A DNA stretch of 64,000 bases, from assembly GCA_965113315.1 (NCBI GenBank), contig OZ220379.1. One strand, 5' to 3'. The stretch comes from Podarcis vaucheri (lineage: Eukaryota). Within the stretch, counting starts at the first letter, position 1; every line of letters begins with the position of its first letter. Of this stretch, positions 43,345 through 64,000 are shown piece by piece. The position numbers were made by a program, and so were the translations under genes. The notes below the pieces were generated by a model, which saw only the letters and a program-made list of their open reading frames with translations, searched no databases and had not been told where the DNA came from.

Positions 43345-46300
43345 TACTACCATGGAACACCTGACTGTGCCCATCTAAACTACAGTGGTATCTTGGGTTA
43401 AGTACTTAATTCGTTCCGGATGTCCGTTCTTAACCTGAAACTGTTCTTAACCTGAAGCACCACTTTAGCTAATGGGGCCTCCCGCTGCCGCTGCCCCACC
43501 GGAGCACGATTTCTGTTCTTATCCTGAAGCAAAGTTCTTAACCTGAAGCACTATTTCTGGGTTAGCGGAGTCTGTAACCTGAAGCATATGTAACCTGAAG
43601 CGTATGTAACCCAAGGTACCACTGTATTTGATTGAAGCTACTGCAGGTGATATTCCCACTAGCATATACTCTGAAAATGGAGTGTTGAGGGGGGTGGGCT
43701 AGTCAAGGATCTGCTGAATGCAAAGTCAGCCCAGCTGCCCGCAAGTTGTGGAAATGGGCCCAGTCCAAGCCTCTGCATTGCACCAGCCTGCAGCAAGAGC
43801 TGCAAACCAGAGTTTTCATCCACTATGTAAGCTCCCACCAGGGTTTGGGATTGTGCCCTCAGGGTGCTATTAATCCACATCAGGTTGTTTTGTCCTTCTT
43901 CTGCCTGTCTTTCAGTCACTATTATATTTTATTATTGCGTTCCATAGTTTTTTATTTTGCCGTATTTTAAAATGACTCGTCTACAATATATTCAATAAAC
44001 TCTTGGTGCATTTTTAATGCACCTGACTTTTACATTTTGTCTGTATATTAAGAGTGCCAATAAATTTTGTTCCGTCTCCCCTTCTAATCCTATTGCTTGA
44101 TTTTTCTTTCAGCTGGAGATTTATGAAGATCACTTCTTCCATAATGTAGTTGCCTGCCTGAAGTCTCTGAGGAAGAGATTCTCCCTGAGACTCATCAATC
44201 CCCATCTACAGGATAAGTATGTTCTCTTTGTACGATGAAGGAGAGATTATGTGAATGCAAGACAGACAGTGATACATAACAAGGAGAAGTGACTTTGCTC
44301 CGTTCAGTCCCTTCTCTGTTTTGTGGATTCACTCCCATTCTACGTGTCTTGTTTTAATATAGAGAGTTTCAAAAATTAATCCAAGGACTGGCACATCACA
44401 ATTTGCTACAGCATTAATTATGCATCTTTGCACTAATCCACTACCACATATATGTGGTAGCATCAAGATCTTCTTTACACTGTAATCGAAGCAATGTACA
44501 TGTGCGGTACCCGGCAAAATCGTAGTTCATGCTCTGTGGTCTGAAGAAAGTCCAGCAGATTGCTAACTCAGTAGTGCAAGATCAAATAATTTGGAACTTC
44601 CAAAAGCAGCGAAGTTGTTTAGATAGGGCTCATTTTAGAAACATCCCTGAATCAGATTACTTAATGACTTAACACTTGGTGGCAGGAAGGGGAATATGAG
44701 AGAGGACTTCAATGAAAAATTGTTGCATATGAGATAATTTCCAGTGATATGAAAGCTCCCGTGATAGCTCATTCACAATTGCATCTCAACCCTTGGTGTT
44801 TTGGCTATAATGTAATGAGTGCATCTCTTTTTGAACCAGTACAGTGGTACCTCGGAATGCGAACAGGATCTGTTCTGGAGCCCCATTTGCATCCTGAACA
44901 CAACATAAGACGTGGCAGTGCATCTGTGCATGTGTGGGTTGCATTTTGGTGCTTCTGCGCATTCGTGTGACGTCATTTTGAGCGTCTGCGCATGCGCGAG
45001 TGGTGAAATCCGGAAGTAATGCGCTCAGTTACTTCCGGGTTGCCGCGGAGCGCAACTCGAATGCGCTCAACCTGAAGCACATTCAACCCGAAGTATGACT
45101 GTACTACAGTGTTACAGTAGTACCTCGGGTTAAGTACTTAATTCGTTCTGGAGGTCCATTCTTAACCTGAAACTGTTCTGAAGCACCACTTTAGCTAATG
45201 CGGCCTCCTGCTGCTGCTGTGCCGCCAGAGCACGATTTCTGTTCCTATCCTGAAGCAAAGTTCTTAAACTGAAGCACTATTTCTGGGTTAGCGGAGTCTG
45301 TAACCTGAAGCGTATGTAACCTGAAGCGTATGTAACCCGAGGTACCACTGTACTACAAAGGTGAGGCCCGTTGAGTAGATCAGGAGGAACGAGATATGGA
45401 ATAAAAATCATAGCCCAAGTCATTCCTTCCTTCACCATCTTTCTTTCTTTTTTTTAATGTTCTATTCCAGTTGGGAAGTTCCCCCGTGGTCTGTTCATTC
45501 ATACTATTCACTGAGGCGACACGCTGTCGTTTTCCCTGCTGGAATGTTCCGCAACCCTTTCTTCCATACCGAATTTCCCAGGTAAGGACTAAGTGGCGCA
45601 GAACTGCTCGCAGAACTGCTGCCCTTCCATTGAACCATGCTGCACATAGCAGTAAGAAAACCCCCAAAAACCCGCCAAAGCAGTTTGATCAGAAAGTCTA
45701 GTGAGACAGAAATGTGGGCACAAATAATGATGGCTCTCCCATGCTTATCTTCAACAATCTGAAAAAAAACCTGTAACCTTACTTAGAATACGGAGTCCAC
45801 GGGGAGGGAAACAAAACCTACATCCCTTTGCTGATGTTTTGCAGGCTTCCCACATAGAGAGCCTGTAGATTACAAGCCATGGAGGTTTCGCTAAGCCCTT
45901 GTCTTGTGTGTTTTTCAGCGCTGTGAACTTTGGAGCCATGGGGTTTTTCATGGCACACGAACTGCTGCACTCCTTCTACGATTATGGTATGTAGTGGGAG
46001 GCATTGTAGATAATCTGCTGCACCTTCCGTTATTTGAACTTGTGGGGTCTTACTTCCCTAAGTGCCAGAACAACTCATTATTGCCCAGCTGTTCTGTGTG
46101 CTGAAACCCAAGGCACCAATTTCTCAACTGCAAAGTGGCTTTGGAAGGAGGCAATTTTCATTGGAGAAGTAACAGGCAGGAGGGAGGTGCTTAACCCTTC
46201 TCCCAGCAATGCACCCTCAGGTTTTGTGTGCCCCTTCCACCCACCCACAGCCTCCTTTGCTCCAGCCATGTTTATTTCTTCACCAATGTGGACCTGGAAC

Positions 46301-49600: not shown

Positions 49601-50717
49601 AGTACAAAACTATTTTTTTGTAGGGCAACAGCAGTCGCTCTTCATTTCTCCTGGGCTTTTAAAGCTGTTTTTGCTTCCGATGTAGTTTGAGAACAATTAG
49701 AAGAGGCTGTATTTTATATGATAAAAATTATTTTTAAAAAAATAGTACAGCACACTAAAGTCAGAAAGGAATTAATTTCACTTGCTTTTCATCTCTTTAC
49801 TTATTTGAGAGTCACTGCATCAAATGTAGTGGGGTTTACTTCTGAGTAGATCTGCATGGAATTGGGAATTCTAATCTGAGGTAGTCATTGTGAAAACTGC
49901 AGCAGGGTAATCTTTATTCCAGATTAATGTAATGCAGAAAACCTTTTGTCTGCCCATTGTCAACTCTCGCTCTTCCCACCACTTGCATGAAGCTCCACAC
50001 AGATTACCCTTGAAAAAAATATGGTCCTCGACAGAAAAAAAGTTTGTCTACTTTGGACCCATACAAGCCACTGGACCTAACAGCATTTATACATGGGTGT
50101 TTTCCACCAGTGTAGGTTTTGCTGCTCAGAGCTGGCTTAACATCTTTTCGAGTAATGTTTGAAGCCTGATGAAAACCTGCAAGACTTATTTCTTTGACAA
50201 GAGACCATGGTGGAGCAGAAAACTAAAACGGACATGGACAACTGCCCCATAATACCACCCCAAAGAGTTGACAATTATTTGGGTGCTTCTCTCAAGGCTA
50301 GACTTTCCATGTAACGTAAAAGAAGACCTTAACTCGTGCAGCTATCAGGACCTAAAGGTCCTACGTTACGTTACATGGAAATTCCAGAAGCCAATTTGTT
50401 CTAGAATATGTGTGGTTCCGCTGCCCCCAAACTTTCTTTCCCACAACGAGAGCTGAGTGGAAACGTGACATAAACATGGAGGAGAAATGACTCACTTGTT
50501 AACCAGAGGTCAATTATTCACACCCCTCTCTTCTCTGCAGGCAATGTGTGGGCGCCAGAGCTCTGAAGGACTGCAAAGCTTCTTGCACAGAGATCCCCAC
50601 AGCCCCCCGCCACTCCGTGTCCTTGGGTCCCTAAGCAACAGCGAAGATTTCTCCAGGCACTTCCACTGTCCGAGTAAATCACCAGTGAATCCAGCTGTGA
50701 AGTGCCACATCTGGTAA
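28853..50717 (+). CDS. KEL: Kell blood group metallo-endopeptidase (M13/neprilysin family), spliced CDS of 17 exons equivalent to human exons 3-19
   Basis: Hand-spliced exons total 2151 nt (716 aa + stop). Every intron is GT-AG with matching phase. Has a type II TM segment, DPCDDFYSYTCGNW, the Kell-type zinc motif HELLH, ENAAD, DPHSPPPLRV and terminal CHIW. Exon-by-exon similarity to recalled human Kell. Confidence 0.93.
29385..29588 (+). CDS. KEL: KEL exon: ETCNTTTC...DPCDDFYSYTCGNW...ENQLIMRRLL
   Basis: ctccag acceptor and G|gtaagg donor; M13 N-terminal cysteine cluster. Confidence 0.93.
30408..30684 (-). mobile_element. Sauria SINE, internally deleted
   Basis: Head and tail present; flanked by the direct repeat tgtatactatata. 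Confidence 0.85.
30887..31011 (+). CDS. KEL: KEL exon: EPHLGSNSSAKEKAVQFYTSCMNTEQIEARGAQPLEELIDK
   Basis: cctcag acceptor (NAGNAG) and AAG|gtgatg donor; M13 KA..FY.SCM motif. Confidence 0.93.
31202..31442 (-). mobile_element. CAGTGGTACCTC MITE (diverged)
   Basis: Degenerate TIRs with TA flanks. Confidence 0.78.
31865..32011 (+). CDS. KEL: KEL exon: IGGWNITGTWKETDFNQTLQILMGKYNTFPFFKAYVGPNASDPSTNIIQ
   Basis: cacag acceptor and CAG|gtaggg donor; resembles human LGGWRISGKWTSLNFNRTL...FPFFRAYLGP. Confidence 0.95.
32800..32865 (+). CDS. KEL: KEL exon: IDHPEFELPPETQFKKKGTYSQ
   Basis: ctcag acceptor and CAG|gtaaaa donor; resembles IDQPEF of Kell. Confidence 0.9.
33306..33775 (-). mobile_element. 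L1-like LINE 3' end inserted into an L2 fragment
   Basis: The - strand reads RIRDQKEEEFQEDWRKFKDYLNKYCNIKN*, then an AT-rich UTR and poly(A). Flanked by the ttagggaagttttt duplication. Confidence 0.65.
34189..34530. mobile_element. hAT-type MITE
   Basis: CAGGGGCGCCGACT...AGTCGGCGCCTATG TIR; perfect 8-bp TSD CTGGGGTC. Confidence 0.82.
35319..35648 (+). mobile_element. Sauria SINE
   Basis: Same family as 26816-27172. Confidence 0.85.
35789..35977 (+). CDS. KEL: KEL exon: VLRLYFQYLTKLGHLMGG...TTIKELQ
   Basis: tacag acceptor and CAG|gtatat donor; 63 codons, phase 0-0. Confidence 0.92.
35999..36371 (+). mobile_element. Sauria SINE (second subfamily) about 20 nt after a KEL donor site
   Basis: TGGCGCTGTGGTCTAAACC head and TTTACCTT tail. 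Confidence 0.82.
37000..37225 (+). mobile_element. CAGTGGTACCTC MITE
   Basis: TIRs with TA flanks. Confidence 0.82.
37942..38087 (+). CDS. KEL: KEL exon: [49 protein letters not shown]
   Basis: ttttaag acceptor and AG|gtgagg donor; APAIDWL and VHD.EYLK.MSQL match Kell. Not in the ORF track. Confidence 0.93.
38444..38573 (+). CDS. KEL: KEL exon: DVLQIYMILYLVRNLSPALDRQFEEAHQELTDKLNSRATNSET
   Basis: ttgcag acceptor (phase 2) and ACG|gtgagc donor; LSPALD.QF motif. Confidence 0.93.
38857..38897. repeat. (TG)n(CG)n microsatellite
   Basis: Seen directly; alternating purine-pyrimidine. Confidence 0.9.
39073..39122. repeat. (TTTC)n microsatellite forming the polypyrimidine tract of a KEL exon
   Basis: Seen directly; ends about 8 nt before the exon start. 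Confidence 0.9.
39131..39241 (+). CDS. KEL: KEL exon: VRAERWRKCLHETSMFFGPILGKMVVQEIFPQKAKDL
   Basis: (TTTC)n tract plus ttttag acceptor; CTC|gtaggt donor; M13 RW..C motif. Confidence 0.9.
39411..39843 (+). mobile_element. RTE-BovB LINE 3' fragment in a KEL intron
   Basis: MYGSESWTIKKA.RRRID.FELWCWRRLL...YFGHLMRREDSLEKTLMLGK; (AAC)n tail. Confidence 0.9.
41416..41514 (+). CDS. KEL: KEL exon: AEQMFSEIRDAIHSHLDQVEWMGSQARQEAKEK
   Basis: ccag acceptor and AAA|gtatgt donor; WM...A..K motif. Confidence 0.93.
42496..42573 (+). CDS. KEL: KEL exon: ISSLQVEIGYPESILQTDEVDNEYQE
   Basis: ttttag acceptor and GAG|gtgagt donor; M13 IGYP motif. Confidence 0.9.
43310..43343. repeat. (GT)n microsatellite
   Basis: Seen directly. 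Confidence 0.9.
43383..43624 (-). mobile_element. CAGTGGTACCTC MITE
   Basis: TIRs with TA flanks. Confidence 0.82.
44113..44216 (+). CDS. KEL: KEL exon: LEIYEDHFFHNVVACLKSLRKRFSLRLINPHLQD(N)
   Basis: tttcag acceptor; the phase-2 donor AA|gtatgt matches the next exon. Confidence 0.88.
44842..45101. mobile_element. Related Tigger-type MITE
   Basis: CAGTGGTACCTCGG...CCGAAGTATGACTG termini with TA flanks. Confidence 0.7.
45115..45350 (-). mobile_element. CAGTGGTACCTC MITE
   Basis: TIRs with TA flanks. Confidence 0.82.
45471..45581 (+). CDS. KEL: KEL exon: WEVPPWSVHSYYSLRRHAVVFPAGMFRNPFFHTEFP(S)
   Basis: ttccag acceptor and AG|gtaagg donor; VFPAG..PFF motif. Confidence 0.95.
45919..45986 (+). 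CDS. KEL: KEL exon with zinc-binding HELLH (45956-45970): AVNFGAMGFFMAHELLHSFYDY
   Basis: tttcag acceptor and G|gtatgt donor; HExxH is HELLH as in Kell (NEP/ECE have HEITH/HELTH). Confidence 0.96.
46561..46908 (-). mobile_element. L2-like LINE 3' end with long (TTA)n microsatellite tail
   Basis: TRQRAFSVVAPALWSALP peptide; similar to 8392-8732. Confidence 0.7.
47545..47711 (+). CDS. KEL: KEL exon: VLPENCLACD...TLLENAADTGGLAMAYQ
   Basis: cacag acceptor and CAG|gtacca donor; third zinc ligand in ENAAD; Kell-type CLAC. Confidence 0.95.
48476..48925. mobile_element. Mariner/Tc2-type MITE (CCGTATTTTTCGCCCCATAGG TIR), GC-rich interior
   Basis: Near-perfect TIRs with TA flanks. Confidence 0.82.
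49384..49479 (+). CDS. KEL: KEL exon: AYKNWLEKHREVKKLPWPEVSHHQLFFISFAH
   Basis: cacag acceptor and CAT|gtaatg donor; QLFF.SFA motif. Confidence 0.92.
50541..50717 (+). CDS. KEL: KEL last coding exon: AMCGRQ...DPHSPPPLRVLGSLSNSEDFSRHFHCPSKSPVNPAVKCHIW*
   Basis: ctgcag acceptor; DPHSP and C..W C-terminus typical of M13; TAA stop. Confidence 0.96.
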   Translation, partial: AMCGRQSSEGLQSFLHRDPHSPPPLRVLGSLSNSEDFSRHFHCPSKSPVNPAVKCHIW

Positions 50718-51866: not shown

Positions 51867-53400
51867 TTATCATCTGTCAATTTAGACATCGCACCAAAAC
51901 CATGAAAAGTTAAGGTTTGGTGTGATGTTTGACTTGAACCTAGATGAATGTACATTGTTTCCTAAATGTGTTTTTATTTTATACTTTATATATATATATA
52001 TGAGATACAGCCTTGAGATTTTGTATGTGTCAAAGGGAGTGAAATTGTGTTGTCTTTATTCCATCATCTGGAGGCCTAATCAACAGGGTGTCACCTGGCC
52101 TGTGGTCCATTAAAGATCTAGCAAATTTTAATCAAGGTGTAGTTCAAACAAACAAAAGGCTCACAGTTTCACTTAAAGGGAAAAATAGTCTTCATGTGTA
52201 TTTCATATGGATTCTATTGCATTGCCAACTCATGTTCATTCTGGGAAAAGGGGTGAAATTGTTGCTAATTTGCCTCTCAAGGCATTCTTTTAGGGAGCAA
52301 ATTATTTATTCAGCGCCACAGCCAAAGAACATCTGCTCTCCAAACACCTGTGTTCAATACTGCTAGATGACTGCAACTGTACTGTGGAACTTGCTGGGCA
52401 TGGAGCCTGAAACTCATGGGATGCAATCACAATACTGTCTGGTAACTCAGGTGGAGTCAAGGGGGGAGAGAACCTAGTAGTGGTGAAGGCAGAGGATGGC
52501 CCCAGGCAGTTCAAAAAAGAGCCTATTTGTGCCAGGAATGGAGCAGGTGGCAAAAAGCTATCTCAAAATAGTCTGCTCATGTGATTTGGCTTTTCACACT
52601 GGACAAGACAGGGGGCTGTGAGACATGAGGAGGCAGTTTAGCTCTTCCAGAAAAGAGTCATGGTGCCAACAAAAACCACCTCTCTGAAGCTGCTGTTTCT
52701 CCCCATCTAGTTTGGCCCTGACCTGAATTCTGAGAATTGTCTCCTGAGGACTGAAGAAAGATGGAGGAGCTGACCTCTAACTAATAATGAGAGTGAAGGA
52801 GATGTGACAGGCTGGTAGCAGGCCTCTCCCTTTTGTTTTCTACTGTAGTCTCACTTAGCTCTGGAGATGGCCTAGTAGCTGAGATGAGACATCTCCCGCC
52901 TCCTCAGTATAACTTCAAAGCAAGCTTCTCCAGGCAACTTCCCTCAGCAGTCAGGAGGGAGCCTTCTGAATTCTTAAAAGACTGAGCAAAGCTGCTTTTC
53001 AAATGGTGAGGCTTACATGGAGCCTTCAGAACTTAACACATTGTGGTGAAACTGGGAAGTGTCCCACTTCAGATTACAGGTGGGCGATTGCATGACTGAA
53101 AGCTTCTCCTCCAAAAATAAACATCAAACCCTTCTGCGCATAGAAAACTAGGATATCTGTGAGGAGGCTATGCTGGAATTCTCTCGGACGTTTGGTTTTC
53201 TATGTGCAGGGGGAAGATTAAAAAAACAAATCTGAGGTATTTTCCATCATGCAGTATCTTGCCTGCAATCAAACCGTTTTACCTCATGATTAGGTAGATC
53301 TTTCTAGAAAGCTTTCAAAGCCCAAGAGCCTGTGACAAGGTGTCACCAGGGGAGGATCAAAAGGCACACTTCTCACTTAGAACAAGCTTTGGTCAGAAGT

Positions 53401-53406
53401 TTTATT
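53401..53406 (-). terminator. Candidate poly(A) signal AATAAA for the LLCFC1-like gene
   Basis: tttatt on the + strand, about 190 nt past the stop codon. Confidence 0.45.
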
Positions 53407-53591
53407 GTTCTCAGGGGGCCATGAATGTGGAGGTGTGTGTAGCTGGTACAAAAGCCCCTGTTCTCCGGTGGAGCCCCCAAAGTCCCTGGACACGAGCGAT
53501 GAAGCCACAGCTGCTTCTCAGAAGGCAATCATGAAGCACAAGTAGATGTTCATGTTGTCTTCATCCATTACCATTGCTAAGACTTCGGGCT

Positions 53592-53776
53592 CTATGTCAC
53601 GCATAAAAAAAACAGCATGACACTGGCTGTGTTCAGAGAGACGGCTAAGTCCAGCAACATGTCCTTCACGGCCGCATTCCCCAGCAGTTGGGAGTCCTCG
53701 CTCTCAGCCATGTCGATCACCTCCATGCCTTCCCCTGTTGATGAAGCCACAAATGTTTCTTCCATCTTCCCCCCGC
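53592..53776 (-). CDS. LLCFC1: LLCFC1/SOF1-like exon 2: (S)GGKMEETFVASSTGEGMEVIDMAESEDSQLLGNAAVKDMLLDLAVSLNTASVMLFFLCVT*
   Basis: Pyrimidine tract plus tttaag acceptor (phase 1) and TAG stop. Collinear with recalled human LLCFC1 [20 protein letters not shown]...AAV...LASVMVF. Same position and orientation relative to KEL as in human. Only 58 aa from its internal ATG, so below the ORF-track cutoff. Confidence 0.82.
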
Positions 53777-54879
53777 CTTAAACATAAAGGGGGAATCAAA
53801 AATCTCTTTTCTATGATTCTCACTCTTTCATTCACTCTGTGTGCTGACACTCCATTCTGCCCCTTCCCCTGAAATGTGTTTACATTCCCTTCTTAGGCTA
53901 AATCTAGACATATAGTTAAAAAAGCGGTGTGGAAATGCTTTTTAAAGAAATGTTCTAAAATATATATTCAATTTCCCATTCGCTCACCATCGCCAACTAG
54001 TGTCACATTTGTATCATGCACTTAAAACACCCTTAAAACGTTATATTTGAGTCCCTTAGTTTATCCTGACACTACCTCTAGCATATTTGCATTGAGTTTT
54101 CATGAGAACCGGGTTTTCCTGAGAAAGTGGTTGTTTCAAGAGGAATGGAAATGTTTTGCAACACACGCACATGCTTGCTACTTTTGGTGCATTTGATATA
54201 GCTATTTGCAGACGTGTCTCTCAGACTGTTGCTGCTTCACCGCTGGAGGCTGATGTGGAGGAAATAATTCTCCCTGCTGTGCCACATTGTACTGGCAGTT
54301 TCATTGCTCTCCTGCACTGCGCAGAAAGCCTTTTGTCCAATCCAGCTGCAGTCAATGCACATGTATGCATGCCTATCTGAAAGCAATGCAGTGTGTGCTG
54401 ATGGCACCCATGGTTCAATGCACAAGGTGAATGCGCTCCCTCTTCCCCACCACATTGACACCTCTCCAGACAATCTTTGCCCCCTTGCAAACAGCTGTGA
54501 ACAAATTTATTTTATGGACAGAGCACCGCGCCCCACTTCTGCTGGGCATGCCTATTTAGTTTTCTATGCATTCTAGCAATTGCCAGGTACTGAGGAACCA
54601 CTGAATGCATCTCACGAAATCCTGGGGCACAGGAGAAATTCTGGGGCACAGAGTTCACACTTCACAATGGCTCTCCATTTCTAGGTAACGGGTGAGCAAT
54701 CTGTCTTTAACAAAAGCATGACTGCCACAATCAATCTCCTTGAGGATTTCTGGACAAACCTGGGGTTCTCGTAGATAGATCCTGGCTTTTGAAACCTTCT
54801 GCCCGGTAAACAAGCCCGCACAACTTGTGGCTCACATACCCTCCAACATTCCTCAGATGAAAATAGGGACATTTCTCAC

Positions 54880-54967
54880 TCCCCTGCAACTGACCCTCCG
54901 AGACCTCCTGTTTTTTGCCGTCCCCCCACAGAGCATTTCCTATCAGAAGAAGGGTGACTGCCACCAT
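54880..54967 (-). CDS. LLCFC1: LLCFC1/SOF1-like exon 1 (signal peptide): MVAVTLLLIGNALWGDGKKQEVSEGQLQG
   Basis: ATG in a strong context (gtgATGg); hydrophobic LLL core; phase-1 donor GGA|gtgaga exactly complements the exon 2 phase. Confidence 0.68.
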
Positions 54968-55395
54968 CACTACACCAACAGGACACAGCACACACCCCCT
55001 CCAACATCCTGAGAAAATCCCTTCATCCCAATTTTATTCCCAGGGCAGAGTTCCCTGGGAGGAGGGATTGTGAATCAAATAGGGGTCTCCTAGCAACTCA
55101 GCACCCTTAACAAACTGGGGCTCCAGGATTCTTTGGGGGAATTCACGACTGTTTAAAGGGATATGACCCTGCTTTAAGGGTATAGGGCCAGTGGGGCCAC
55201 TTGCCTATCCAAATCTATCCAAATGTTGCTGAATATTTTGGAACAGCAGTAGCTGTTCTGTAAGTGCCACACCATCCACTGTGAGATGAAACTTTCTATG
55301 AAACGTTTCAAATGATTTTTTAATAGGCAACTCTTTCTGCCCATTTACCAGCACATCCTGCTTCCACGTTCAGCCCAGGGAAAGCTATTGCAGAT

Positions 55396-55767
55396 GGTGG
55401 GTGGAGCTGTGGTCTAAACCACTGAGTCGCTTGGGCTTGCCGATCAGAAGGTCGGCGGTTCGAATCCCTGCAACAAGGTGAGCCCCCGTTGCTCAGTCCC
55501 AGCTCCTGATAACCTAGCAGTTTGAAAGCACGCCAGTGCAAGTAGATAAATAGGTACCACTGTGGCAGGAAGGTAAACAGCGTTTCTGTGCGCTCTGGCT
55601 TTTGTCACGGTGTCCCGTTGCACCAGAAGCAGTTTAGTCATGCTAGCCACATGACCCTGAAAGCTGTCTGTGGACAAGCGCTGGCTCCTTCAGCCTGAAA
55701 GCAAGATGAGTGCCGAAACCCTACAGTCGCCTTTGACTGGACTTAACTGTCCAGGGGTCCTTTACCT
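55396..55767 (+). mobile_element. Sauria SINE
   Basis: Same subfamily as 35999-36371. Confidence 0.82.
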
Positions 55768-57813
55768 ATCAATATATGAAGACAGCTGGTGGGGGAAGGG
55801 GGACATTCCACATTCGTGGTGTGGGTTTTTTAGGCACAGGTTTTCACTCTCACTGTTGCCATCTTCCTACTGCTATGTCACCACCTTCTGTCTGTTTTGC
55901 CTCCTTTCTTGACACCACTGATTTCTCAGGTTGCTATGCCCTGTGGCTCTATCATATTACTTACCTCCTCCCTGTCTCTTGTCCATGGTTGCTTGGAGGA
56001 CAGCTTGGCTGATGAAGCCATCAGAGTAAACAAGGAAGTGAGTTGTGAAGAGCACAGCCAACAGGCCGATGGTACCCTCCAGGGACACCATTGGGACCAG
56101 ATCACCTTTTCTCCACCTCTACCATTTGAGAGGACAGGAGACACCCCTCCTCATGGACCCCCTTGAGTTAATGAAGCACTGTGTCAGGTTTCTCACTCCT
56201 GAACAGGGCTCATGACATCACCAGACCTTTGTGACATAATACGAGCTCACACACTTCTTCTGCATGCCTCCAGTGAGCAGGATCACAAAGGGAAGGGGAC
56301 AACAAATAATGAAAACGCAGTTGTCTTTGAACAGAGAAAATCTCAGAACAAAGAATGGGGCTGAGGTTTGGGCCAGGAAGACAACTGGCTGATGTTTATT
56401 ATATGTAGATACCAATCCAACAGGAAGCGATCCAACATTTCTCCAATGAAAATAGGGGCACCCTATTCAATTGATATTAATATTATTATTAATAGCCTGT
56501 CCATCTGATTGGGTTGCCCCAGCCACTCTGGGCGGCTTCCAACAGATATAAAACATTAAACATTAAAAAACACCCCTATACAGGGCTGCCTTCAGATGTC
56601 TAAAGGTTGTATAGATACTTATCGCCTTGGTTTGGGGGTCGCTTAACTCCATACCCTCCAACATTTCACTGATGAAAACAGAGATGTCCTGGGGAAAGGG
56701 GGGCATTCCAGGATCAAATCAGGAACTGGGACAGCTTCTGTAAATCCAGGACTGTCCCTGGAAAATAGGGACACTTGGAGGGTCTGTGTTCTTATTAAAT
56801 TTTCAGAAACATGGAACTATAGCTGAACAACGGCACACATCCTGTTGATGCAGCTCCTGAAATCTCATAGAAAACTTGATGTAATCGTTCTACTTCTCAT
56901 GTCAGGAAGACCATCCCTCTACTAAATATCCCCACAACTAGGAGGCAGGGTTGTCCCCTGTAGTATTGCCATCTCTCAAAATAAAAGAATCTGGGGAGGT
57001 GCTGGTGGCAGCTGTTCATTTCCATGGGACTTGTGGAGGAAAGCATCTAGTTGGATGGTACCCATTGGGACTTTAAAAGACGAACACTTATTCACTAAGA
57101 TAGCCTCCAGATGGTGCTCTAACATAGTAGATACGTTAGTCCTGGGAAAGGAGACTATCAGCAAGTGAATCAATACAGTACTGCTTTTTATTTACATCTG
57201 ACAGACACCTCCCCTGTGATGCCTTGTTGCAGAGCATCATCTTTATTTTTTCGTGTCATCCCAGACAGAAAAAGATCTTGCATGATCTAGCCTAGGTCCT
57301 CTACTAAGCCTGTAGCCTAGGAAGACCCATAGCTCAGAGGGAGAGCATCTGTTTTGCATGTAGGCGGCCAGGGTTCAATCCCTCAGCCACCTCAGTTAGG
57401 GCTGGGGAAGACCCCTGCCTGAAACGCAGACAGCCCACTGTGAACCAGTATAGACTAGACAATACTGAGCTAGACAACCAATAGACAGGAGCTGCAAGAT
57501 ACACTTGGACAAAATTAGTTGAAAAACCCCCAAGACCACAAACTGGGTGGGAAGCTTCTCCAAGAGTCAATACTTTCTTTTTTTGTAAAAACATATATTA
57601 ATTTTTTCTGTTTTACATTTTAGAATGTTCATTTTAAAAAAGCTTAAAATATCAGTGACTTCGCTTCTTCTCTTTCCATGGTTCTTCTTGTTCTCTTCTT
57701 CTATATGTTAAGTCTGCAAGCTGCACATATTCCATCAGTTTAAGTTGCCATTCTTCTTTAGTTGGGACCTCACTTGTTTTCCATTTTTGGGCTAACAAAA
57801 CACAGGCCACAGT

Positions 57814-58186
57814 AGTTGTTGCTTAGTCGATTAGTCGTGTCCGACTCTTCGTGACCCCCTGGACCAGAGCACACCAGGCACTCCTGTCTTCCACTGCCTC
57901 CCGCAGTTTGATCAAACTCATGCTGGTAGCTTCGAGAACACTGTCCAACCATCTCGTCCTCTGTCGTCCCCTTCTCCTTGTGCCCTCCATCTTTCCCAAC
58001 ATCAGGGTCTTTTCCAGGGAGTCCTCTCTTGTCCTGAGGTGGCCAAAGTATTGGAGCCTCAGCTTCACGATCTGTCCTTCCAGTGAGCACTCAGGGCTGA
58101 TTTCCTTAAGAATGGATAGATTTGATCTTCTTGCAGTCCATGGGACTCTCAAGAGTCTACTCCAGCACCAGAATTCAAAAGCATAC
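57814..58186 (-). mobile_element. RTE-BovB LINE 3' fragment
   Basis: FEFWCWSRLLRVPWTARRSN...RWLD. Confidence 0.88.
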
Positions 58187-59304
58187 ATAAATAACCTTTT
58201 TTTTTTTTTTGACACCTGGGAATTCCCAAAAGTCAATACTCATAGCTTCTTAAAAATGCAAGCCTTCTTCCTTCAGTTGTGGTAACATTAACCTTGCAGT
58301 TTCAAGCATATTAGCATTTTACTTGGTTGACATGACACCAGGTCTCTGACTGACAGCTGCCGATCTCTGGAGGCTTCTCATACAACTCCTGTAAACAGGA
58401 GCCACATTGGAAAGGGCAGGGTAATTCTGAGCATCCCTCCCACCACCTATTGGTTCCTTCCATTCCTGTCACATTCATGGTACAATATGGAGCAGGGGTG
58501 CCAATTTGAATTAAAAAAAAATTGTGGAAGGGGGGGGGAGGTAAACCCAATCCTGCATAATCGATCACAAGATACAGTGCTCACACACTATTTGAATGGG
58601 AATACCCATCAACTTTTGGGGAGGCAGCCCCCTCAAATATTTTATTGGGGAGATGGTGAAGGCACCTCGGCCACTATGATATAGAGCCAGTTGGCACAAG
58701 TCCGTATTCCAAAAAACTCTTAACTTCCTTTCAATAGGGAAAAAATTATGAAATGAGGGTATCTCTAAATGGAGGACAAGCAAGGATCCCTTGACCAGCA
58801 AGGATTTGTGGGGTAGGTTTCTCAGTGCTCTAGGGGAGGGAGAAATTGTATTGGTTGGCTAAAATACGGCTCAGTTAACAGGAATATTTTGTTTCCAATT
58901 CCTAATTCAACCCCATATTTCTAAAAATCCTACAGGGTTTTTGCAGTTTGGTTTTCTAGCTTCCCCAAAAGACATCAGGCAGACATCACCTAGGTTGATT
59001 CAGGGGGACTCTGAGAGACATAAATATCAGAAAGAGACTATTTGGGTGATCTGGAAATCATTATCTGGCTATCCAGATATCAAGGAACACATAGGCCAGG
59101 AAAGTATCCGACATAGATGTTGCTGATTACAGTTCCCAGTATCCTAGACCTTTGGCCATGCTGGCTGGAGCTAATGGGACTTATAGTCCAAAGGATGGAG
59201 AGCACCACTATTGGTTATAGGCTTATCAGCTGCAAAGGAGGACGGGATTCTTGTACCTTTAATAGCCAAGGAGAGAAAACGGAGACGAATTTTAGCAAGG
59301 GGAG

Positions 59305-59546
59305 GAAGAGTTTGGATTTGATATCCCACTTTATCACTACCTGAAGGAGTCTCAAAGCGGCTAACATTCTCCTTTCCCTTCCTCTCCCACAACAAACACT
59401 CTGTGAGGTGAGTGGGCCTGAGAGACTTCAGAGAAGTGTGACTAGCCCAAGGTCACCCAGCAGCTGCATGTGGAGGAGCGGAGACGCGAACCCGGTTCAC
59501 CAGTTTATGAGTCTACCGCTCTTAACCACTACACCACACTGGCTCT
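59305..59546 (-). mobile_element. tRNA-derived CORE-type SINE (Squam3-like)
   Basis: Near-identical to 5090-5338. Confidence 0.75.
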
Positions 59547-59581
59547 CCAATTCCACTGGAATTGGTCTCATGCCTCCAAAA

Positions 59582-59717
59582 CAGGCATAGGCAAACTCCG
59601 GCCCTCCAGATGTTTGGGACTACAATTCCCATCATCCCTAGCTAACAGGACCAGTAGTCAGCGATGATGGGAATTGTAGTCCCAAACATCTGGAGGGCCG
59701 GAGTTTGCCTATGTCTG
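59582..59717. mobile_element. Fold-back hAT MITE (near-perfect hairpin)
   Basis: Inverted arms of about 55 bp; perfect 8-bp TSD CTCCAAAA. Confidence 0.88.
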
Positions 59718-60380
59718 CTCCAAAACAACCTGCCCATGCTGCCCTTCCCTCTTCTGTTCAACAATAAAAGGCATAGGAGCCTAGTTTTCATTTGAAGGTG
59801 GCCACTTTGCAAGCAACCCTGTTTGGCTTCTAGAACTTCTGCTCCAGATTTCAGGGCCAGCTTTCCCCCTCTTAATATCCGAAATGAGGTGTGTGCAGAT
59901 GAGGCAGATGGGTTAATGCTCCCCCCGCCAGGGCAAACAAGCAGTCACATGAGCCTGTCGCCTAATGCAGTTCTCCGGTCCAGCGGAGCACAGAAGAGGT
60001 TATCGCCCTCCGCATCAAAACACTGTCCCCATCCAGCTCCTTGGGTGTAAGCTCATTCCCAAGAGTGGGCGTGAAGACCCCCAGGCAAGAAGGAGCCAGT
60101 GAAGGGAAGAAGCAAATTGGAATGAAAGATCCTAATCGGCCTGCTTGCTAATCGGTGCCCAAGACTTGGCTCCTCGCAAAGGAGGAGGGGATTAGGCCAA
60201 GGAAAGACCTTTTCCACTTGCAGGGCAGGACTTGGGCAGAGAAGGGCATGGAGGACAAAGGAAGGGCAGGCAGAGAATTGCAGAGTTGGAAGGGATTAAA
60301 TCATCTAGTCCAACCCCTTGCAACCCAGCGCTGGGACAAAAGGGATCGTAGAAAAATCACAGGCAAAGCTATTCTGTGAC

Positions 60381-60719
60381 TAAAGATAAAGGAAAAGGAG
60401 CCCTGGATGGTTGAGTCCAGTCAAAGGCGACTATGGGGTTGCGGCGCTCATCTGGCTTTCAGGCCGAGGGAGCTGGCTAAACCACTTCTGGCGCAACGGG
60501 ACACCATGACGGAAACCAGAGCGTACGGAAACACCATTTACCTTCCCGCTGCAGCAGTACCTATTTATCTACTTGTACTGGTGTGTTTTCAAACTGCTAG
60601 GTTGGCAGGAGCTGGGACAGAGCAACGAGAGCTCACCCCGTCATGGGGATTCGAACCGCCGACCTTCTAATAAGCAATTCCAATAGGCTCAATGGTTTAG
60701 ACCACAGCGCCACCCGTAT
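60381..60719 (-). mobile_element. Sauria SINE
   Basis: Reverse-complement match to the family. Confidence 0.8.
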
Positions 60720-60953
60720 CTCTGTAAACTTCATCTGTGACTACAGGTTTACAGGACAGGTTTAAGAGCCTCCCTAAATCCAGGAAAGGAATGTTCTGAT
60801 GAACAGGGCAAGCCAGAGGTAGCAGCGCCTGGTTCCTTTGTAAAACTGGGATGGCGGAGGAGCAGGTGGACTCCACTCCACAATGCAGGCATTATTTGAT
60901 TCGAGTCCCCAGTGCAAATACCCAGTCGGGTACTGTCCACATGATCTTCCCCT

Positions 60954-61143
60954 CAGTGGCGTAGCGTGGGGGGTGCAGGGGGGGGCGGCCGTACCGGGCG
61001 CAACATCTGGGGGTTAGGGTTAGGGGGCGCAAATCCACGGGTTAGGGGGCGCAAATCCATGGGTTAGGGGCACAAATCCACGGGCTAGGGAGCACAAATT
61101 ACTTGCCTTGCCCCGGGTGCTGACAACCCACGCTACGCCACTG
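60954..61143 (+). mobile_element. hAT MITE with TTAGGG-containing minisatellite (4 units)
   Basis: TIR CAGTGGCGTAGCGTGGG / CCCACGCTACGCCACTG; perfect TSD CTTCCCCT. Confidence 0.88.
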
Positions 61144-62647
61144 CTTCCCCTGCTTTTTGAGTGGGAAGAATCACCCACAGTGGGCTTCCATGTGGCTTTT
61201 GTATCATTCCTCCACATCATGCTGTCGCAGCTGAATGTACAAACCCAGGCCCCAGCAAGGAACTGTTGTCAGTCAGAAAAAAGCAGAAGTTGTGTATTGT
61301 CAGGAGGGATGATAGTGCGGACATGCTTAGAATTCCCCCAGCGAAAGAAATTAGAATAGCCGAAGCAGAGGAACCTTCAGTGAGTTGCCCTGAGGCTGCG
61401 AAATGAGCTGCCAAAACAGATACAATCTCTGTCAGTCTCTTTAACACACTCGAAAAATGTATTTGCTTTTAACCTTTATAAATTGCCTTTCGGCTGATTG
61501 TATCCAAGACAGTAGAGAACAGCAGCGTGAAAACAGCTTGATAGTTTAAAATGGCAGCATGTCAGAACAATTCGTTAGAATAAATATTGCAACCGGATGA
61601 AAATCTGTAAATGGAAAGGTTAGTGTTCACCAGATGCTTGGAAATGCACAGAGTAGGGCACAGGTGGGCTTTTTATTTTTATTTTAAAGGGGAGCCTGTT
61701 TGTTGAGATGGTTTTGGAGATGTCTACTTTCTACCCAAATGGATCAAGCGTGCAACCTTAGTGGCTGGGGCAACCCAGTTAGATGGGTGGGGTGTAAAAT
61801 TATTATTATTATTATTATTAGATAGTACACCCCTGTTTTCATAGGAGAAATGTTGGCGTGTATGCAGGAGTGGCCTGGGGTAGGGAAAGGAACACAGACA
61901 TGGGCCGCTGCTGAAAATGTAATGATTTGTAGCGATTCGGCTGTTTTCTGCAATTGCCACCAACCTTACCACAACGTTCTGGAAAAATGTACAGCACAGA
62001 TAACTGGGAGTGGTGAGAGGTGCTGCCCCGCAGCACTGCGGCCGTTCTCATGTCACTGAGTACACTGCGAGGTCTCTGCGGTCATTCTTCCTGAGGCAGG
62101 CAGTCCCTCACATTTCTGCGTCTTGCTTATTACTATTATCAAGGTGTTACACACACTGTACTGCCAGAATCTATTTTTAATACCTGACCTGTGCATTCTA
62201 AGCCTTGCCAAACAGGCTGACTATTCCTTGTCTCGAGCAGAGAGCTTCGCTCCCTCCAGGCCATTGCAACATTAATGCTCTTCTTGGAGGAGGTTTGCGT
62301 CGCAGTTTAGTTGCCAAGTTTCCCTTATTTTATGCCAGAGATTACCACCTTGTATGTCCTCAGCAAAAACTCTAATCTGCATAAAACCGTTGGGGGGCTA
62401 AGAGTAATCAAGTTCTGCAAATTAGGTTGGAGTCTACGGGCAGTAAGGGGTTCTGGAGCACACAGATACATGCACAAAATCCACACAAGAGCTGTAACAC
62501 TGAAGCATAGACTATCTCTGTTTCCTAGTGTTCAGCTCTTCCCTATTAGGGAAATCACAGGCCAAGGCTTTACAACACATTGATTATAATTGACAGAACC
62601 TCCAAGAACCAGATGAATTCACTTCAGGGCTGGATCTCACCTGTAAG

Positions 62648-62814
62648 CAGTGGTGTAGTGTGGGGGGTGCAGGGGGGGCCGGCCGCACCGGGCGCAACAT
62701 CTGGGGTTAGGGTTAGGGGGCGCAAATCCACATGTTAGGGGGCGCAAATCCACGGGTTAGGAGGCGCAAATTACTTGCCTTGCCCGGGTGCTGACAACCC
62801 ACGCTACGCCACTG
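62648..62814 (+). mobile_element. hAT MITE with TTAGGG-containing minisatellite (3 units)
   Basis: Same family as 60954; perfect TSD CCTGTAAG. Confidence 0.88.
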
Positions 62815-63158
62815 CCTGTAAGCAGTGCTCTTCCTCCCCGCTCCCCAAAAAGTGCTGGGATTCTGCCCTTGTTGTTTTATAATGGCAATGGCCCCCACCT
62901 GAGAGGTGCCTTAACTGAGTTCTGGCAAGTTCCAGATGAAACCCCCCCCCCCCGGTAGAATGCCCCTTGTTTGTTCTGTGGGATTTCTGGAGTTATGCAA
63001 CCCCCGAGCCAAGGAGATAAGTAACTATACAGCCTTTAGAAAACATCTGAAGGCAGCCCTGTAGAGGGAAGTTTTTAAACGTTTAATGTTTTATTATGTT
63101 TTTATGTGTGTTGGAAGCCTCCCAGAGTGGCTGGGGCCACCCAGTCAGATGAGTGGGC

Positions 63159-63198
<40 letters not shown>
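63159..63198. repeat. (AAT)n microsatellite (L2-type tail)
   Basis: Seen directly. Confidence 0.9.
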
Positions 63199-63199
<1 letters not shown>

Positions 63200-63658
63200 G
63201 ACTTCCACATTTTCATTAGAAGCCCGATTCATTCTCACTCGCTCTCTTTCACTTACATGCACACAATTGGCCTGTCAGTATGATGTCAAGATTTATTTGT
63301 TCTACTGTACCTTTTCTGTTTTGTTCTAGTCCTGGCCCTCACCCCCCAACCCCCCTTTCGCTGTTTCTACATCCAAATTGGCTTTTACTGCTAGCTGATT
63401 CAAATGTTATTATGCAGCTTGACCATCCATGAGGTCTTCAATTTCTTCTGGCCTCAGATTAACATTGAGATGGTTATAATGGCCCCTGAAGGAGAAAGTA
63501 CTTGGCAATGCCGCCGCCTCCAAAACACTAATGTATGAAATCAACAAGAAATCACATCTGAGACCTCTCTCCTCGGCTGATGTGTGGTCGTTAATAGATA
63601 TTGAACTGGCAAAAGTGTACAAAATACGCTCCATATTTCTTCTAAATACCCTCTAGTC

Positions 63659-63903
63659 CAGGGGTCAGCAACCTTTTTCAGCAGGGGGCCGGTCCACTGT
63701 CCCTCAGACCTTGTGGGGGGCCGGACTATATTTTGAAAAAAATAATGAATTCCTATACCCCACAAATAACCAGAGATGCATTTTAAATAAAAGGACACAT
63801 TCTACTCATGTAAAAACACGCTGATTCCTGGACTGTCCACAGGCTGGATTTAGAAGGCGATTGGGCTGGATCCAGCCCCCGGGCCTTAGTTTGCCTACCC
63901 ATG
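63659..63903. mobile_element. hAT (Charlie-like) MITE
   Basis: CAGGGGTCAGCAA...TTGCCTACCCATG termini at a CTAG-type target; TSD degraded. Confidence 0.65.
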
Positions 63904-63919
63904 CCTAGCCTAAGACATA

Positions 63920-64000
63920 TATAAAATATATAAAAGGATGTCACATGGAGGAGGGAGAAAGGTTGTTTTCTGCTGCTCCAGAGAAGCGTACACGGAGCAA
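63920..64000 (+). mobile_element. CR1 fragment cut by the window end
   Basis: ggatgtcacatggaggagggagaaaggttgttttctgctgctccagag. Confidence 0.55.

What the first reader, a model, noticed from the sequence alone, without database searches (positions are those of the whole stretch)
53592..54967. Hidden two-exon reptile orthologue of the sperm-egg fusion factor SOF1/LLCFC1
Seen: two - strand exons joined by a phase-1 GT-AG intron encode a 90-aa protein, MVAVTLLLIGNALWGDGKKQEVSEGQLQG|SGGKMEETFVASSTGEGMEVIDMAESEDSQLLGNAAVKDMLLDLAVSLNTASVMLFFLCVT*. It has a signal peptide and a downstream AATAAA (53401-53406). Exon 2 falls below the ORF-track cutoff. Known: LLCFC1 (C7orf34/SOF1) lies tail-to-tail with KEL on human 7q34, is needed for mouse sperm-oocyte fusion, and is usually described as mammalian. 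My recollection of its sequence includes [20 protein letters not shown]...AAV...LASVMVF. Inference: motif similarity plus synteny indicate an intact lizard orthologue, which would date this fertilisation factor to the amniote ancestor. Such a small gene is easily missed by annotation.
Basis: partly seen in the sequence, partly recalled or inferred. Interest (0 to 1): 0.88.

Follow-up and report, generated by a model that had tools for sequence, protein, structure and literature searches.

The report
Lizard LLCFC1/SOF1 gene, already annotated

Summary
Exon 2 is real. Window 53595-53774 (-) hits Pfam PF15838 (LLCFC1) at E 3e-15, 56 bits against a cut-off of 27.

The true first coding exon is 56091-55965 (-), with donor g|gtaagt in phase 1. 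It encodes an M-V-S-L signal-peptide exon shared with other squamates, turtles and mammals.

RefSeq XP_053226440.1, 'sperm-egg fusion protein LLCFC1 isoform X1 [Podarcis raffonei]' (103 aa), is 100% identical to the window's exon 1 plus exon 2. Lacerta, Emydura, Sylvia and Manacus entries are also named LLCFC1. The 90-aa model is therefore wrong and the gene is already annotated.

Spliced, transcript-like contigs from three public runs join 55965 to 53734, not 53776. That gives an 89-aa short form without the conserved MEETFVASST motif. A Crotalus protein has the same junction.

KEL (HELLH motif, M13 C-terminus, stop at about 50717, + strand) lies tail-to-tail, as in human. No TRPV exon was found.

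One thing remains unexplained. A 28-codon tail (53604-53518) is conserved across amniotes. Here it sits in the -1 frame, just after a U_UUU_UUA heptamer.

The parts
55965..56091 (-). True first coding exon of LLCFC1. ATG at 56091-56089, then 42 codons plus 1 base (phase 1); donor g|gtaagt, with gt at 55964-55963. It encodes the signal-peptide region MVSLEGTIGLLAVLFTTHFLVYSDGF...
   Evidence: tblastn: 100% identity to residues 1-43 of RefSeq Podarcis raffonei LLCFC1 X1, 97.7% to Lacerta agilis and 57% to Gekko kuhli. Spliced contigs cover 55964-56120 and 55964-56161. Sequence read. The M-x-S-L-G start aligns with mammalian LLCFC1.
56092..56161 (-). Minimum extent of the 5' UTR
   Evidence: Contig X5 record 16 reaches 56161 and X1 record 1 reaches 56120. 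The transcription start itself is not defined.
53735..55964 (-). Intron as seen in transcript-like contigs (GT..AG, 2230 nt). In the RefSeq X1-type form the intron is 53777-55964.
   Evidence: Joint 53733/53734 to 55964/55965, ends CT..AC on the + strand. Seen in X1 (depth 1776), X2 (5038) and X5 (20), that is two organisms and two studies.
53592..53776 (-). With exon 1 it gives 103 aa.
   Evidence: Pfam PF15838 E 3.3e-15, 56.1 bits, profile 21-72/72. 100% identity to residues 43-103 of P0172.
53735..53776 (-). A 42-nt alternative segment (GGKMEETFVASST) that the RNA-supported acceptor acag|gg at 53735/53734 skips. The short form is in frame and gives 89 aa.
   Evidence: The only exon1-exon2 joint listed in four runs is 55965^53734. 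Crotalus adamanteus KAK9407912.1 (P0079, 87 aa) has the same junction (...QGK|GEGMEV). The short exon 2 still passes Pfam at 35.3 bits.
53399..53591 (-). 3' UTR, with AATAAA at 53406-53401
   Evidence: Contig X2 record 8 covers 53399-53669. Sequence read.
53518..53604 (-). Conserved 28-codon tail ORF (MRDIEPEVLAMVMDEDNMNIYLCFMIAF*) in the -1 frame relative to the main ORF
   Evidence: ORF listed. Tail-only tblastn: skink 86% identity, E 1.9e-13; tegu 78%, E 5.5e-11; Sylvia 46%, E 1.4e-7; vole-like mammal 39%, E 0.016. Every best hit falls at this place and in this frame. Alignment.
53604..53610 (-). U_UUU_UUA heptamer in the zero frame (ctg tt[t ttt tta] tgc). The zero-frame stop lies 9 nt downstream.
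   Evidence: Read directly from the sequence. No stable downstream structure was predicted (z -0.36).
54881..54967 (-).
   Evidence: No Pfam hit, no counterpart among the homologues compared and no joint at 54880. An unspliced low-depth contig covers 54839-55024.
50469..50717 (+). Last coding exon of the neighbouring KEL-like M13 peptidase gene (...KCHIW*), convergent with LLCFC1
   Evidence: Pfam Peptidase_M13 E 1e-9, profile 148-205/205. The HELLH zinc motif sits at 45956 (+). Three + strand ORFs hit M13.
55380..55795 (.). High-copy repeat inside intron 1
   Evidence: Summed contig depth is 900-55000 in all four runs, with many loose ends. There is no Rfam match.

Best explanation
The locus is the Podarcis (wall lizard) orthologue of LLCFC1/SOF1. 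It is a two-coding-exon gene on the minus strand.

Exon 1 (56091-55965) encodes a signal-peptide-like N-terminus. A 2.2-kb phase-1 intron follows. Exon 2 encodes the LLCFC1 domain: an acidic stretch, then the hydrophobic '...LDLAVSLNTASVMLFF' end that corresponds to the mammalian CFNLAS motif.

Two in-frame acceptors exist. Acceptor 53776 gives the 103-aa form annotated by RefSeq. Acceptor 53734 gives an 89-aa form without MEETFVASST, and this is the only junction seen in the transcript-like contigs examined.

Shown here: family membership, exon structure, splicing, convergent KEL neighbour, and amniote-wide distribution.

Inferred from mouse genetics only (PMC7261011): the product is a small secreted or acrosome-associated sperm protein needed for sperm-oocyte membrane fusion, possibly by stabilising the SPACA6/IZUMO1-type complex (PMC13319360). 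Nothing here tests expression tissue or function.
For: Pfam PF15838 at 56.1 bits against a cut-off of 27. phmmer finds sauropsid and mammalian LLCFC1 proteins. RefSeq P. raffonei LLCFC1 X1 is 100% identical over both exons, and L. agilis is 98% identical. A GT..AG joint 55965^53734 appears in contigs of three runs at depth 20-5038, against 0-29 in the unique parts of the intron; those runs total 37-77 million letters, far below the 1.3-2.0 billion letters of the runs that hold the whole stretch, which are probably genomic. The exon-1 start M-x-S-L-G aligns from lizard to mammals. The KEL-like gene has HELLH and an M13 C-terminus and ends at 50717 on the + strand.
Against: The runs are only guessed to be RNA, and tissue is unknown because the metadata are coded. 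Contigs drop minor isoforms, so the 103-aa form may also be expressed; contig X7 record 23 runs through 53734 to 53766. The literal 'LLLL' and 'CFNLAS' strings are not present (GLLAVLF and VSLNTAS instead). No TRPV5/6 exon was detected in 56200-64000. No functional data exist for any sauropsid.
Confidence: 0.93

Rival explanations
1. One reading: a 90-aa protein from exon 1 at 54967-54881 spliced at 54880^53776.
For: An ATG-initiated ORF with a hydrophobic start and a phase-1 a|gtgag donor exists there. Its 12-residue hydropathy maximum is similar to that of the true exon 1.
Against: No Pfam hit. None of the homologues compared matches it, whereas they match 56091-55965. No joint at 54880 appears in four runs, and an unspliced contig spans it. 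It lies inside the RNA-supported intron.
Confidence: 0.03
2. In squamates the functional product is mainly the 89-aa short form, which lacks the family's most conserved motif (EE.FVASS). That would imply divergence of function from mammalian SOF1.
For: The only exon1-exon2 joint listed in X1, X2 and X5 is 55965^53734. In X1 the depth over 53734-53776 is accounted for by one low-depth unspliced contig. The Crotalus adamanteus protein KAK9407912.1 has the same junction.
Against: The skipped 42 nt stay an intact ORF, and MEETFVASSTGEG is essentially invariant across lizards, turtles, crocodilians and birds, which implies it is translated somewhere. RefSeq calls the long form isoform X1. Contigs hide minor isoforms, and tissue is unknown.
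Confidence: 0.4
3. The locus is a decaying relic or pseudogene of LLCFC1 with no protein function in lizards.
For: The main ORF stops before the conserved tail. The dominant transcript skips the most conserved motif.
Against: Both exons are intact and 98-100% identical between lacertid genera. The core is 86% identical to the skink protein. Spliced contigs are very deep. The one difference seen in the core between relatives, at 53670, is synonymous (codon read).
Confidence: 0.03

Closest known systems
RefSeq XP_053226440.1, sperm-egg fusion protein LLCFC1 isoform X1 [Podarcis raffonei] (also XP_033029241.1, Lacerta agilis)
   Same: 100% identical to the translation of window 56091-55963 plus 53777-53595. 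Same two coding exons and same 103-aa product.
   Different: None at protein level. The transcript-like contigs laid here favour the downstream acceptor (89-aa form) rather than X1.
Mouse SOF1/LLCFC1 (Noda et al. 2020, PMC7261011)
   Same: Same Pfam family. Same architecture: signal-peptide exon, then an acidic EE.FVASS.GE region, then a hydrophobic C-terminal motif. Same convergent KEL neighbour as I recall for human 7q34 (my knowledge, not tested here). The intron sits in the same place, judged from genomic read-through ORFs of mammals.
   Different: About 45-50% identity in the core. 'CFNLAS' reads 'VSLNTAS' and there is no literal LLLL. A short isoform skips FVASS. Function is tested only in mouse.
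Ensembl/UniProt A0A670JYY2_PODMU (Podarcis muralis, uncharacterised, PF15838)
   Same: Exon 2 is 100% identical to the window.
   Different: Its 5' exon maps to intronic ORFs at 54202-54081. Its C-terminus jumps to the tail through a 44-nt GC-AG gap. This looks like an alignment-driven model, not a real transcript.
-1 programmed ribosomal frameshift sites of the U_UUU_UUA type (HIV-1 gag-pol; cellular PEG10 uses G_GGA_AAC) - my knowledge
   Same: The same heptamer in the zero frame, a zero-frame stop shortly downstream, and a conserved ORF opening in the -1 frame.
   Different: No stimulatory downstream structure was predicted. There is no experimental or ribosome-profiling evidence. In some lineages the tail is simply in frame.

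Membership tests
LLCFC1/SOF1 (Pfam PF15838) | Match to the family profile above the curated gathering score | tested here: met
   56.1 bits against 27, E 3.3e-15, profile 21-72/72. The short exon 2 still scores 35.3 bits.
LLCFC1/SOF1 (Pfam PF15838) | N-terminal signal-peptide exon homologous to that of known members | tested here: met
   Window 56091-55965 aligns with squamate, turtle and mammalian N-termini (M-x-S-L-G..., hydrophobic core). No signal-peptide predictor was available; only hydropathy was computed.
LLCFC1/SOF1 (Pfam PF15838) | Named motifs 'LLLL' and 'CFN(L/S)AS' (PMC7261011) | tested here: inconclusive
   The aligned positions read GLLAVLF and VSLNTAS. They are homologous positions but not the literal strings. 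All sauropsid members share this variant.
LLCFC1/SOF1 (Pfam PF15838) | Conserved EE.FVASS.GE motif | tested here: met
   MEETFVASSTGEG lies at 53765-53727 and is nearly invariant in alignment A2. The RNA-supported short isoform skips it.
LLCFC1/SOF1 orthology | Tail-to-tail synteny with KEL | tested here: met
   An M13 peptidase with the HELLH motif at 45956 lies on the + strand, with its C-terminal exon ending at 50717. LLCFC1's 3' end is at about 53399 on the - strand. That HELLH is specific to KEL among M13 members rests on my knowledge.
LLCFC1/SOF1 orthology | TRPV5/6 upstream, head-to-head | tested here: not met
   No Pfam hit in ORFs of 56200-64000 on either strand. Only 7.9 kb is available and small exons could be missed, so this is weak negative evidence.
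LLCFC1/SOF1 function | Testis or spermatid expression and a requirement for sperm-oocyte fusion | not testable with these tools
   Run metadata are coded and the library kind is only guessed. No sauropsid functional data were found in the literature search.
-1 programmed ribosomal frameshifting (novel case only) | Slippery X_XXY_YYZ heptamer in the zero frame, with a conserved -1 ORF downstream | tested here: met
   U_UUU_UUA at 53610-53604. The -1 ORF is conserved (E 1.9e-13 to the skink tail).
-1 programmed ribosomal frameshifting (novel case only) | Downstream stimulatory RNA structure | tested here: not met
   The MFE of the 136 nt from the site is no better than shuffles (z -0.36). Pseudoknots were not modelled.
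-1 programmed ribosomal frameshifting (novel case only) | A trans-frame protein product | not testable with these tools
   Needs ribosome profiling, mass spectrometry or a reporter assay.

The most novel reading that the evidence does not exclude
In this lizard, and by the shared 'FFLCVT*' ending in most sauropsids (perhaps some rodents too), the amniote-conserved C-terminal tail of LLCFC1 (...NIYLCFMIA[YF]) lies in the -1 frame. It would be reached by recoding, most simply -1 ribosomal frameshifting on the U_UUU_UUA heptamer that ends the main ORF. The gene would then make a short and a tail-bearing protein from one mRNA. In skink, oscine passerines and catarrhine primates the same tail is plainly in frame.
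Probability: 0.2. Interest if true: 0.75.

Novelty: already known. Interest (0 to 1): 0.22.

Why it matters
The main claim matters little as a discovery. The gene is already annotated under this name in the same genus and across sauropsids.

It is still worth stating that the fertilisation literature (PMC7261011, PMC8488580) treats SOF1 as mammalian. The databases show a clear amniote-wide family with conserved exon structure and KEL synteny, so reviews of gamete-fusion evolution should be updated.

Two details could matter more. First, squamate transcripts appear to prefer an acceptor that deletes the family's most conserved motif. Second, the conserved C-terminal tail changes its frame relation to the core between lineages. 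That needs either recoding or an explanation nobody has yet given. It might relate to the unexplained SOF1 protein doublet in mouse, which is speculation.

Tried and rejected

2. Internal splicing to bring the tail into frame. Enumeration of donor-acceptor pairs in the window gives only 32-56-nt pairings near the junctions used by the tegu and Podarcis Ensembl models (the matching ones are GC-AG, without a pyrimidine tract), or longer introns that delete much of the domain. The contigs are continuous over 53399-53733. I judged this unlikely in this lizard.

3. Stimulatory RNA structure after the heptamer: none by MFE.

4. AlphaFold2 of the tail-bearing skink protein with alignment A2: mean pLDDT 56.7, isolated helices, uninformative. 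No fold search was run on it.

5. TRPV5/6 synteny: no Pfam hits in 56200-64000.

6. Rfam on 53000-56600: nothing.

7. Literature on LLCFC1/C7orf34 recoding or sauropsid orthologues: nothing specific.

No DNA of other species could be fetched, so no codon-level (dN/dS, PhyloCSF-type) test of the tail or core was possible.

9. The joined 103-aa or 89-aa sequence was not built or searched, so the presumed RefSeq isoform X2 was not looked up.

10. The human entry returned was not fetched. P0129, a primate-like sequence of unnamed species from public contigs, was fetched and not used further. No human contig was handled.

11. In one search the two short exon-1 translations were typed into a script for a hydropathy calculation only.

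Full report
**Observation**

An acceptor ttaag|gc is followed by GGKMEETFVASSTGEGMEVIDM...SLNTASVMLFFLCVT and a stop. AATAAA is at 53406-53401. The ORF at 54967-54881 with a donor a|gtgag also exists in the sequence. So the letters are right. What needed testing was whether the two pieces belong together.

**Identity of exon 2**

The 60-residue translation of window 53595-53774 (-) matches Pfam PF15838 (LLCFC1) at E 3.3e-15. The score is 56.1 bits against a cut-off of 27, covering profile positions 21-72 of 72.

A profile-free phmmer scan of 1.84 billion representative proteins returned 69 hits. The short ones fall into two groups:
- A sauropsid group (MEETFVASSTGEGMEVIDM...LNTxS...FFLCVT): Gekko kuhli, Salvator merianae, Alligator, emu, Calidris, Turdus, Anas, Meleagris.
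- A mammalian group ([19 protein letters not shown]...CFNLASIMVFL).

These are shown. The long multi-stretch hits are repetitive proteins and were not pursued.

**The first exon is elsewhere**

tblastn of the Gekko protein placed its first 40 residues at window 56091-55960 (-), E 1.9e-9.

The sequence there reads as follows: an ATG at 56091, 42 codons (MVSLEGTIGLLAVLFTTHFLVYSDGFISQAVLQATMDKRQGG), one extra base, then a consensus donor g|gtaagt. This is phase 1, which fits the phase-1 acceptor of exon 2.

Further homologues settle it:
- RefSeq XP_033029241.1 (Lacerta agilis, 'LLLL and CFNLAS motif-containing protein 1-like') is 97.7% identical over exon 1 and 98.4% over exon 2.
- RefSeq XP_053226440.1 ('sperm-egg fusion protein LLCFC1 isoform X1 [Podarcis raffonei]', 103 aa) is 100% identical over both.
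- The Ensembl/UniProt model of Podarcis muralis (A0A670JYY2) is 100% identical in exon 2. Its odd 5' part maps to intronic ORFs at 54202-54081.

The window is therefore from Podarcis or a very close relative. In the alignment, the exon-1 start M-x-S-L-G followed by a hydrophobic core is shared from lizards to placental and marsupial LLCFC1.

**RNA evidence**

No run is on record as RNA. However, several small runs (37-138 million letters of contigs) hold 8-17% of the stretch's sampled words. The runs that hold 54-92% of it are much larger, 1.3-2.0 billion letters, and are probably genomic.

Laying four of the small runs gave one exon1-exon2 joint. It skips 2230 bases with CT..AC ends on the + strand, which is GT..AG on the gene's strand. 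It joins 55965 to 53734. It was seen in X1 (depth 1776, 157 letters on the shorter side), X2 (depth 5038) and X5 (depth 20, 198 letters), that is two organisms and two studies.

Depth in the unique parts of the intron is 0-29. No joint uses 54880. A low-depth contig runs unspliced across it (X2 record 10, 54839-55024).

The contigs reach 56161 at the 5' end and 53399 at the 3' end, just past the AATAAA.

Caveats: the library kind is a guess, tissue is unknown, and contigs drop minor forms.

**An unexpected acceptor**

The joint lands at 53734, not at 53776. Both acceptors are in phase 1. Acceptor 53776 gives the 103-aa RefSeq X1 protein. Acceptor 53734 (acag|gg) gives an in-frame 89-aa protein that lacks GGKMEETFVASST, the best conserved motif of the family.

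In X1, the depth over 53734-53776 is fully accounted for by one depth-29 contig that continues into the intron. The long form is therefore at most a small fraction in that run.

An independent annotation has exactly this junction: Crotalus adamanteus KAK9407912.1, 'putative protein C7orf34 like', 87 aa (...WQGK|GEGMEVINM). The short exon 2 still passes Pfam at 35.3 bits.

Because the skipped segment is invariant across sauropsids, it must be translated somewhere. Raw testis reads are needed to weigh the two forms.

**Synteny**

On the + strand, three ORFs between 42 and 53.6 kb hit Peptidase_M13. One carries HELLH at 45956. From my knowledge, that is the zinc motif of Kell rather than of NEP, ECE or PHEX.

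The last ORF (50469-50714...KCHIW*) matches the end of the M13 domain at E 1e-9. KEL therefore ends at about 50717, and LLCFC1 ends at about 53399 on the other strand.

No TRPV-type domain was found in the 7.9 kb upstream of LLCFC1 on either strand. That part of the synteny claim is untested rather than refuted.

**Novelty**

All sauropsid hits carry PF15838 in the precomputed annotation. Several are named by RefSeq:
- Podarcis raffonei, Emydura macquarii and Sylvia atricapilla: 'sperm-egg fusion protein LLCFC1'.
- Lacerta agilis and Manacus vitellinus: 'LLCFC1-like'.

The gene is not hidden, and its amniote-wide distribution can be read off the databases.

The literature lags:
- Noda et al. 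2020 call SOF1 conserved in mammals and rarely elsewhere (PMC7261011).
- Fujihara et al. 2021 say it lacks clear non-mammalian homologues (PMC8488580).
- Vance et al. 2022 ran PSI-BLAST on SOF1 and describe its distribution as similar to that of families found in mammals and select birds, reptiles and amphibians (PMC9482655).

**How it probably works**

Only mouse genetics speaks to function. Sof1-null males are sterile because sperm cannot fuse with the oolemma (PMC7261011), and SPACA6 is lost from Sof1-null sperm (PMC13319360).

By orthology I infer a small protein that carries a signal peptide, is associated with sperm, and supports the fusion machinery. This step is inferred, not shown, for any reptile.

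**Noticed: a conserved tail in another frame**

Directly after the main ORF, a 28-codon ORF (53604-53518, MRDIEPEVLAMVMDEDNMNIYLCFMIAF*) lies in the -1 frame.

The same peptide is the in-frame C-terminus in several lineages:
- the skink Lerista (86% identity, E 1.9e-13 for the tail alone);
- oscine passerines, including RefSeq Sylvia (E 1.4e-7);
- catarrhine monkeys;
- one vole-like contig.

Ensembl models of tegu, duck, turkey, kakapo, cat, sheep and peccary reach it through very small gaps.

The skink-lacertid identity of the tail (87% with the two preceding Phe, 86% for the tail alone) equals that of the core (86%) and far exceeds that of exon 1 (60%).

The zero-frame ending 'FFLCVT*' is shared by lacertids, Phrynosoma, Crotalus, Gekko, Alligator, Emydura and Calidris. 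The out-of-frame state is therefore old, yet the tail has not decayed.

In the window the main ORF ends ctg tt[t ttt tta] tgc gtg aca tag. That places a U_UUU_UUA heptamer in the zero frame, with the zero-frame stop 9 nt later and the -1 frame opening with AUG.

The contigs show eight U's, no indel and no internal splice. Near the junctions used by the tegu and Podarcis Ensembl models, only gaps of 32-56 nt could join the frames, and the ones that reproduce those models are GC-AG. No stable downstream structure is predicted.

I record this as unexplained. Candidate explanations are -1 frameshifting, a separate small ORF, rare slippage, or a non-coding constraint.

**Verdict**

Exon 2 and the gene's identity are right. 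Exon 1, the junction and the 90-aa product are wrong. The claim that the gene is unannotated is refuted by an identical RefSeq protein. Interest in the finding as stated is low. The isoform and tail observations are the parts worth a follow-up.

Noticed in passing
window 53518-53610 (-): A 28-codon ORF conserved across amniotes (...NIYLCFMIAF*) sits in the -1 frame, right after the LLCFC1 stop. A U_UUU_UUA heptamer in the zero frame precedes it. The same tail is in frame in skink, oscine passerines and catarrhine monkeys.
   Followed up: partly
window 53734-53776 (-): Transcript-like contigs of three runs use the downstream acceptor at 53735/53734. This removes 14 residues that include the family's most conserved FVASS motif. 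A Crotalus adamanteus protein has the same junction.
   Followed up: partly
window 55380-55795 and about 54835-54872: High-copy repeat inside the LLCFC1 intron. Summed contig depth reaches 55000 in all four runs from four organisms, with many loose ends. There is no Rfam match.
   Followed up: no
window 54081-54202 (-): The 5' part of the Ensembl/UniProt Podarcis muralis model A0A670JYY2 maps to intronic ORFs here, and its C-terminus jumps to the tail through a 44-nt GC-AG gap. The public model looks like an alignment artefact.
   Followed up: partly
window 45956 and 50469-50717 (+): A KEL-like M13 metalloprotease gene (HELLH motif; last exon ...KCHIW*) ends about 2.7 kb from the LLCFC1 3' end. 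Its other exons were not mapped.
   Followed up: partly
proteins P0003, P0007, P0011 and others: Long proteins of 600-2500 aa match the LLCFC1 core 3-9 times each at about 30% identity, with E down to 3.5e-16. They are probably repetitive helical proteins unrelated to LLCFC1. They were not examined.
   Followed up: no
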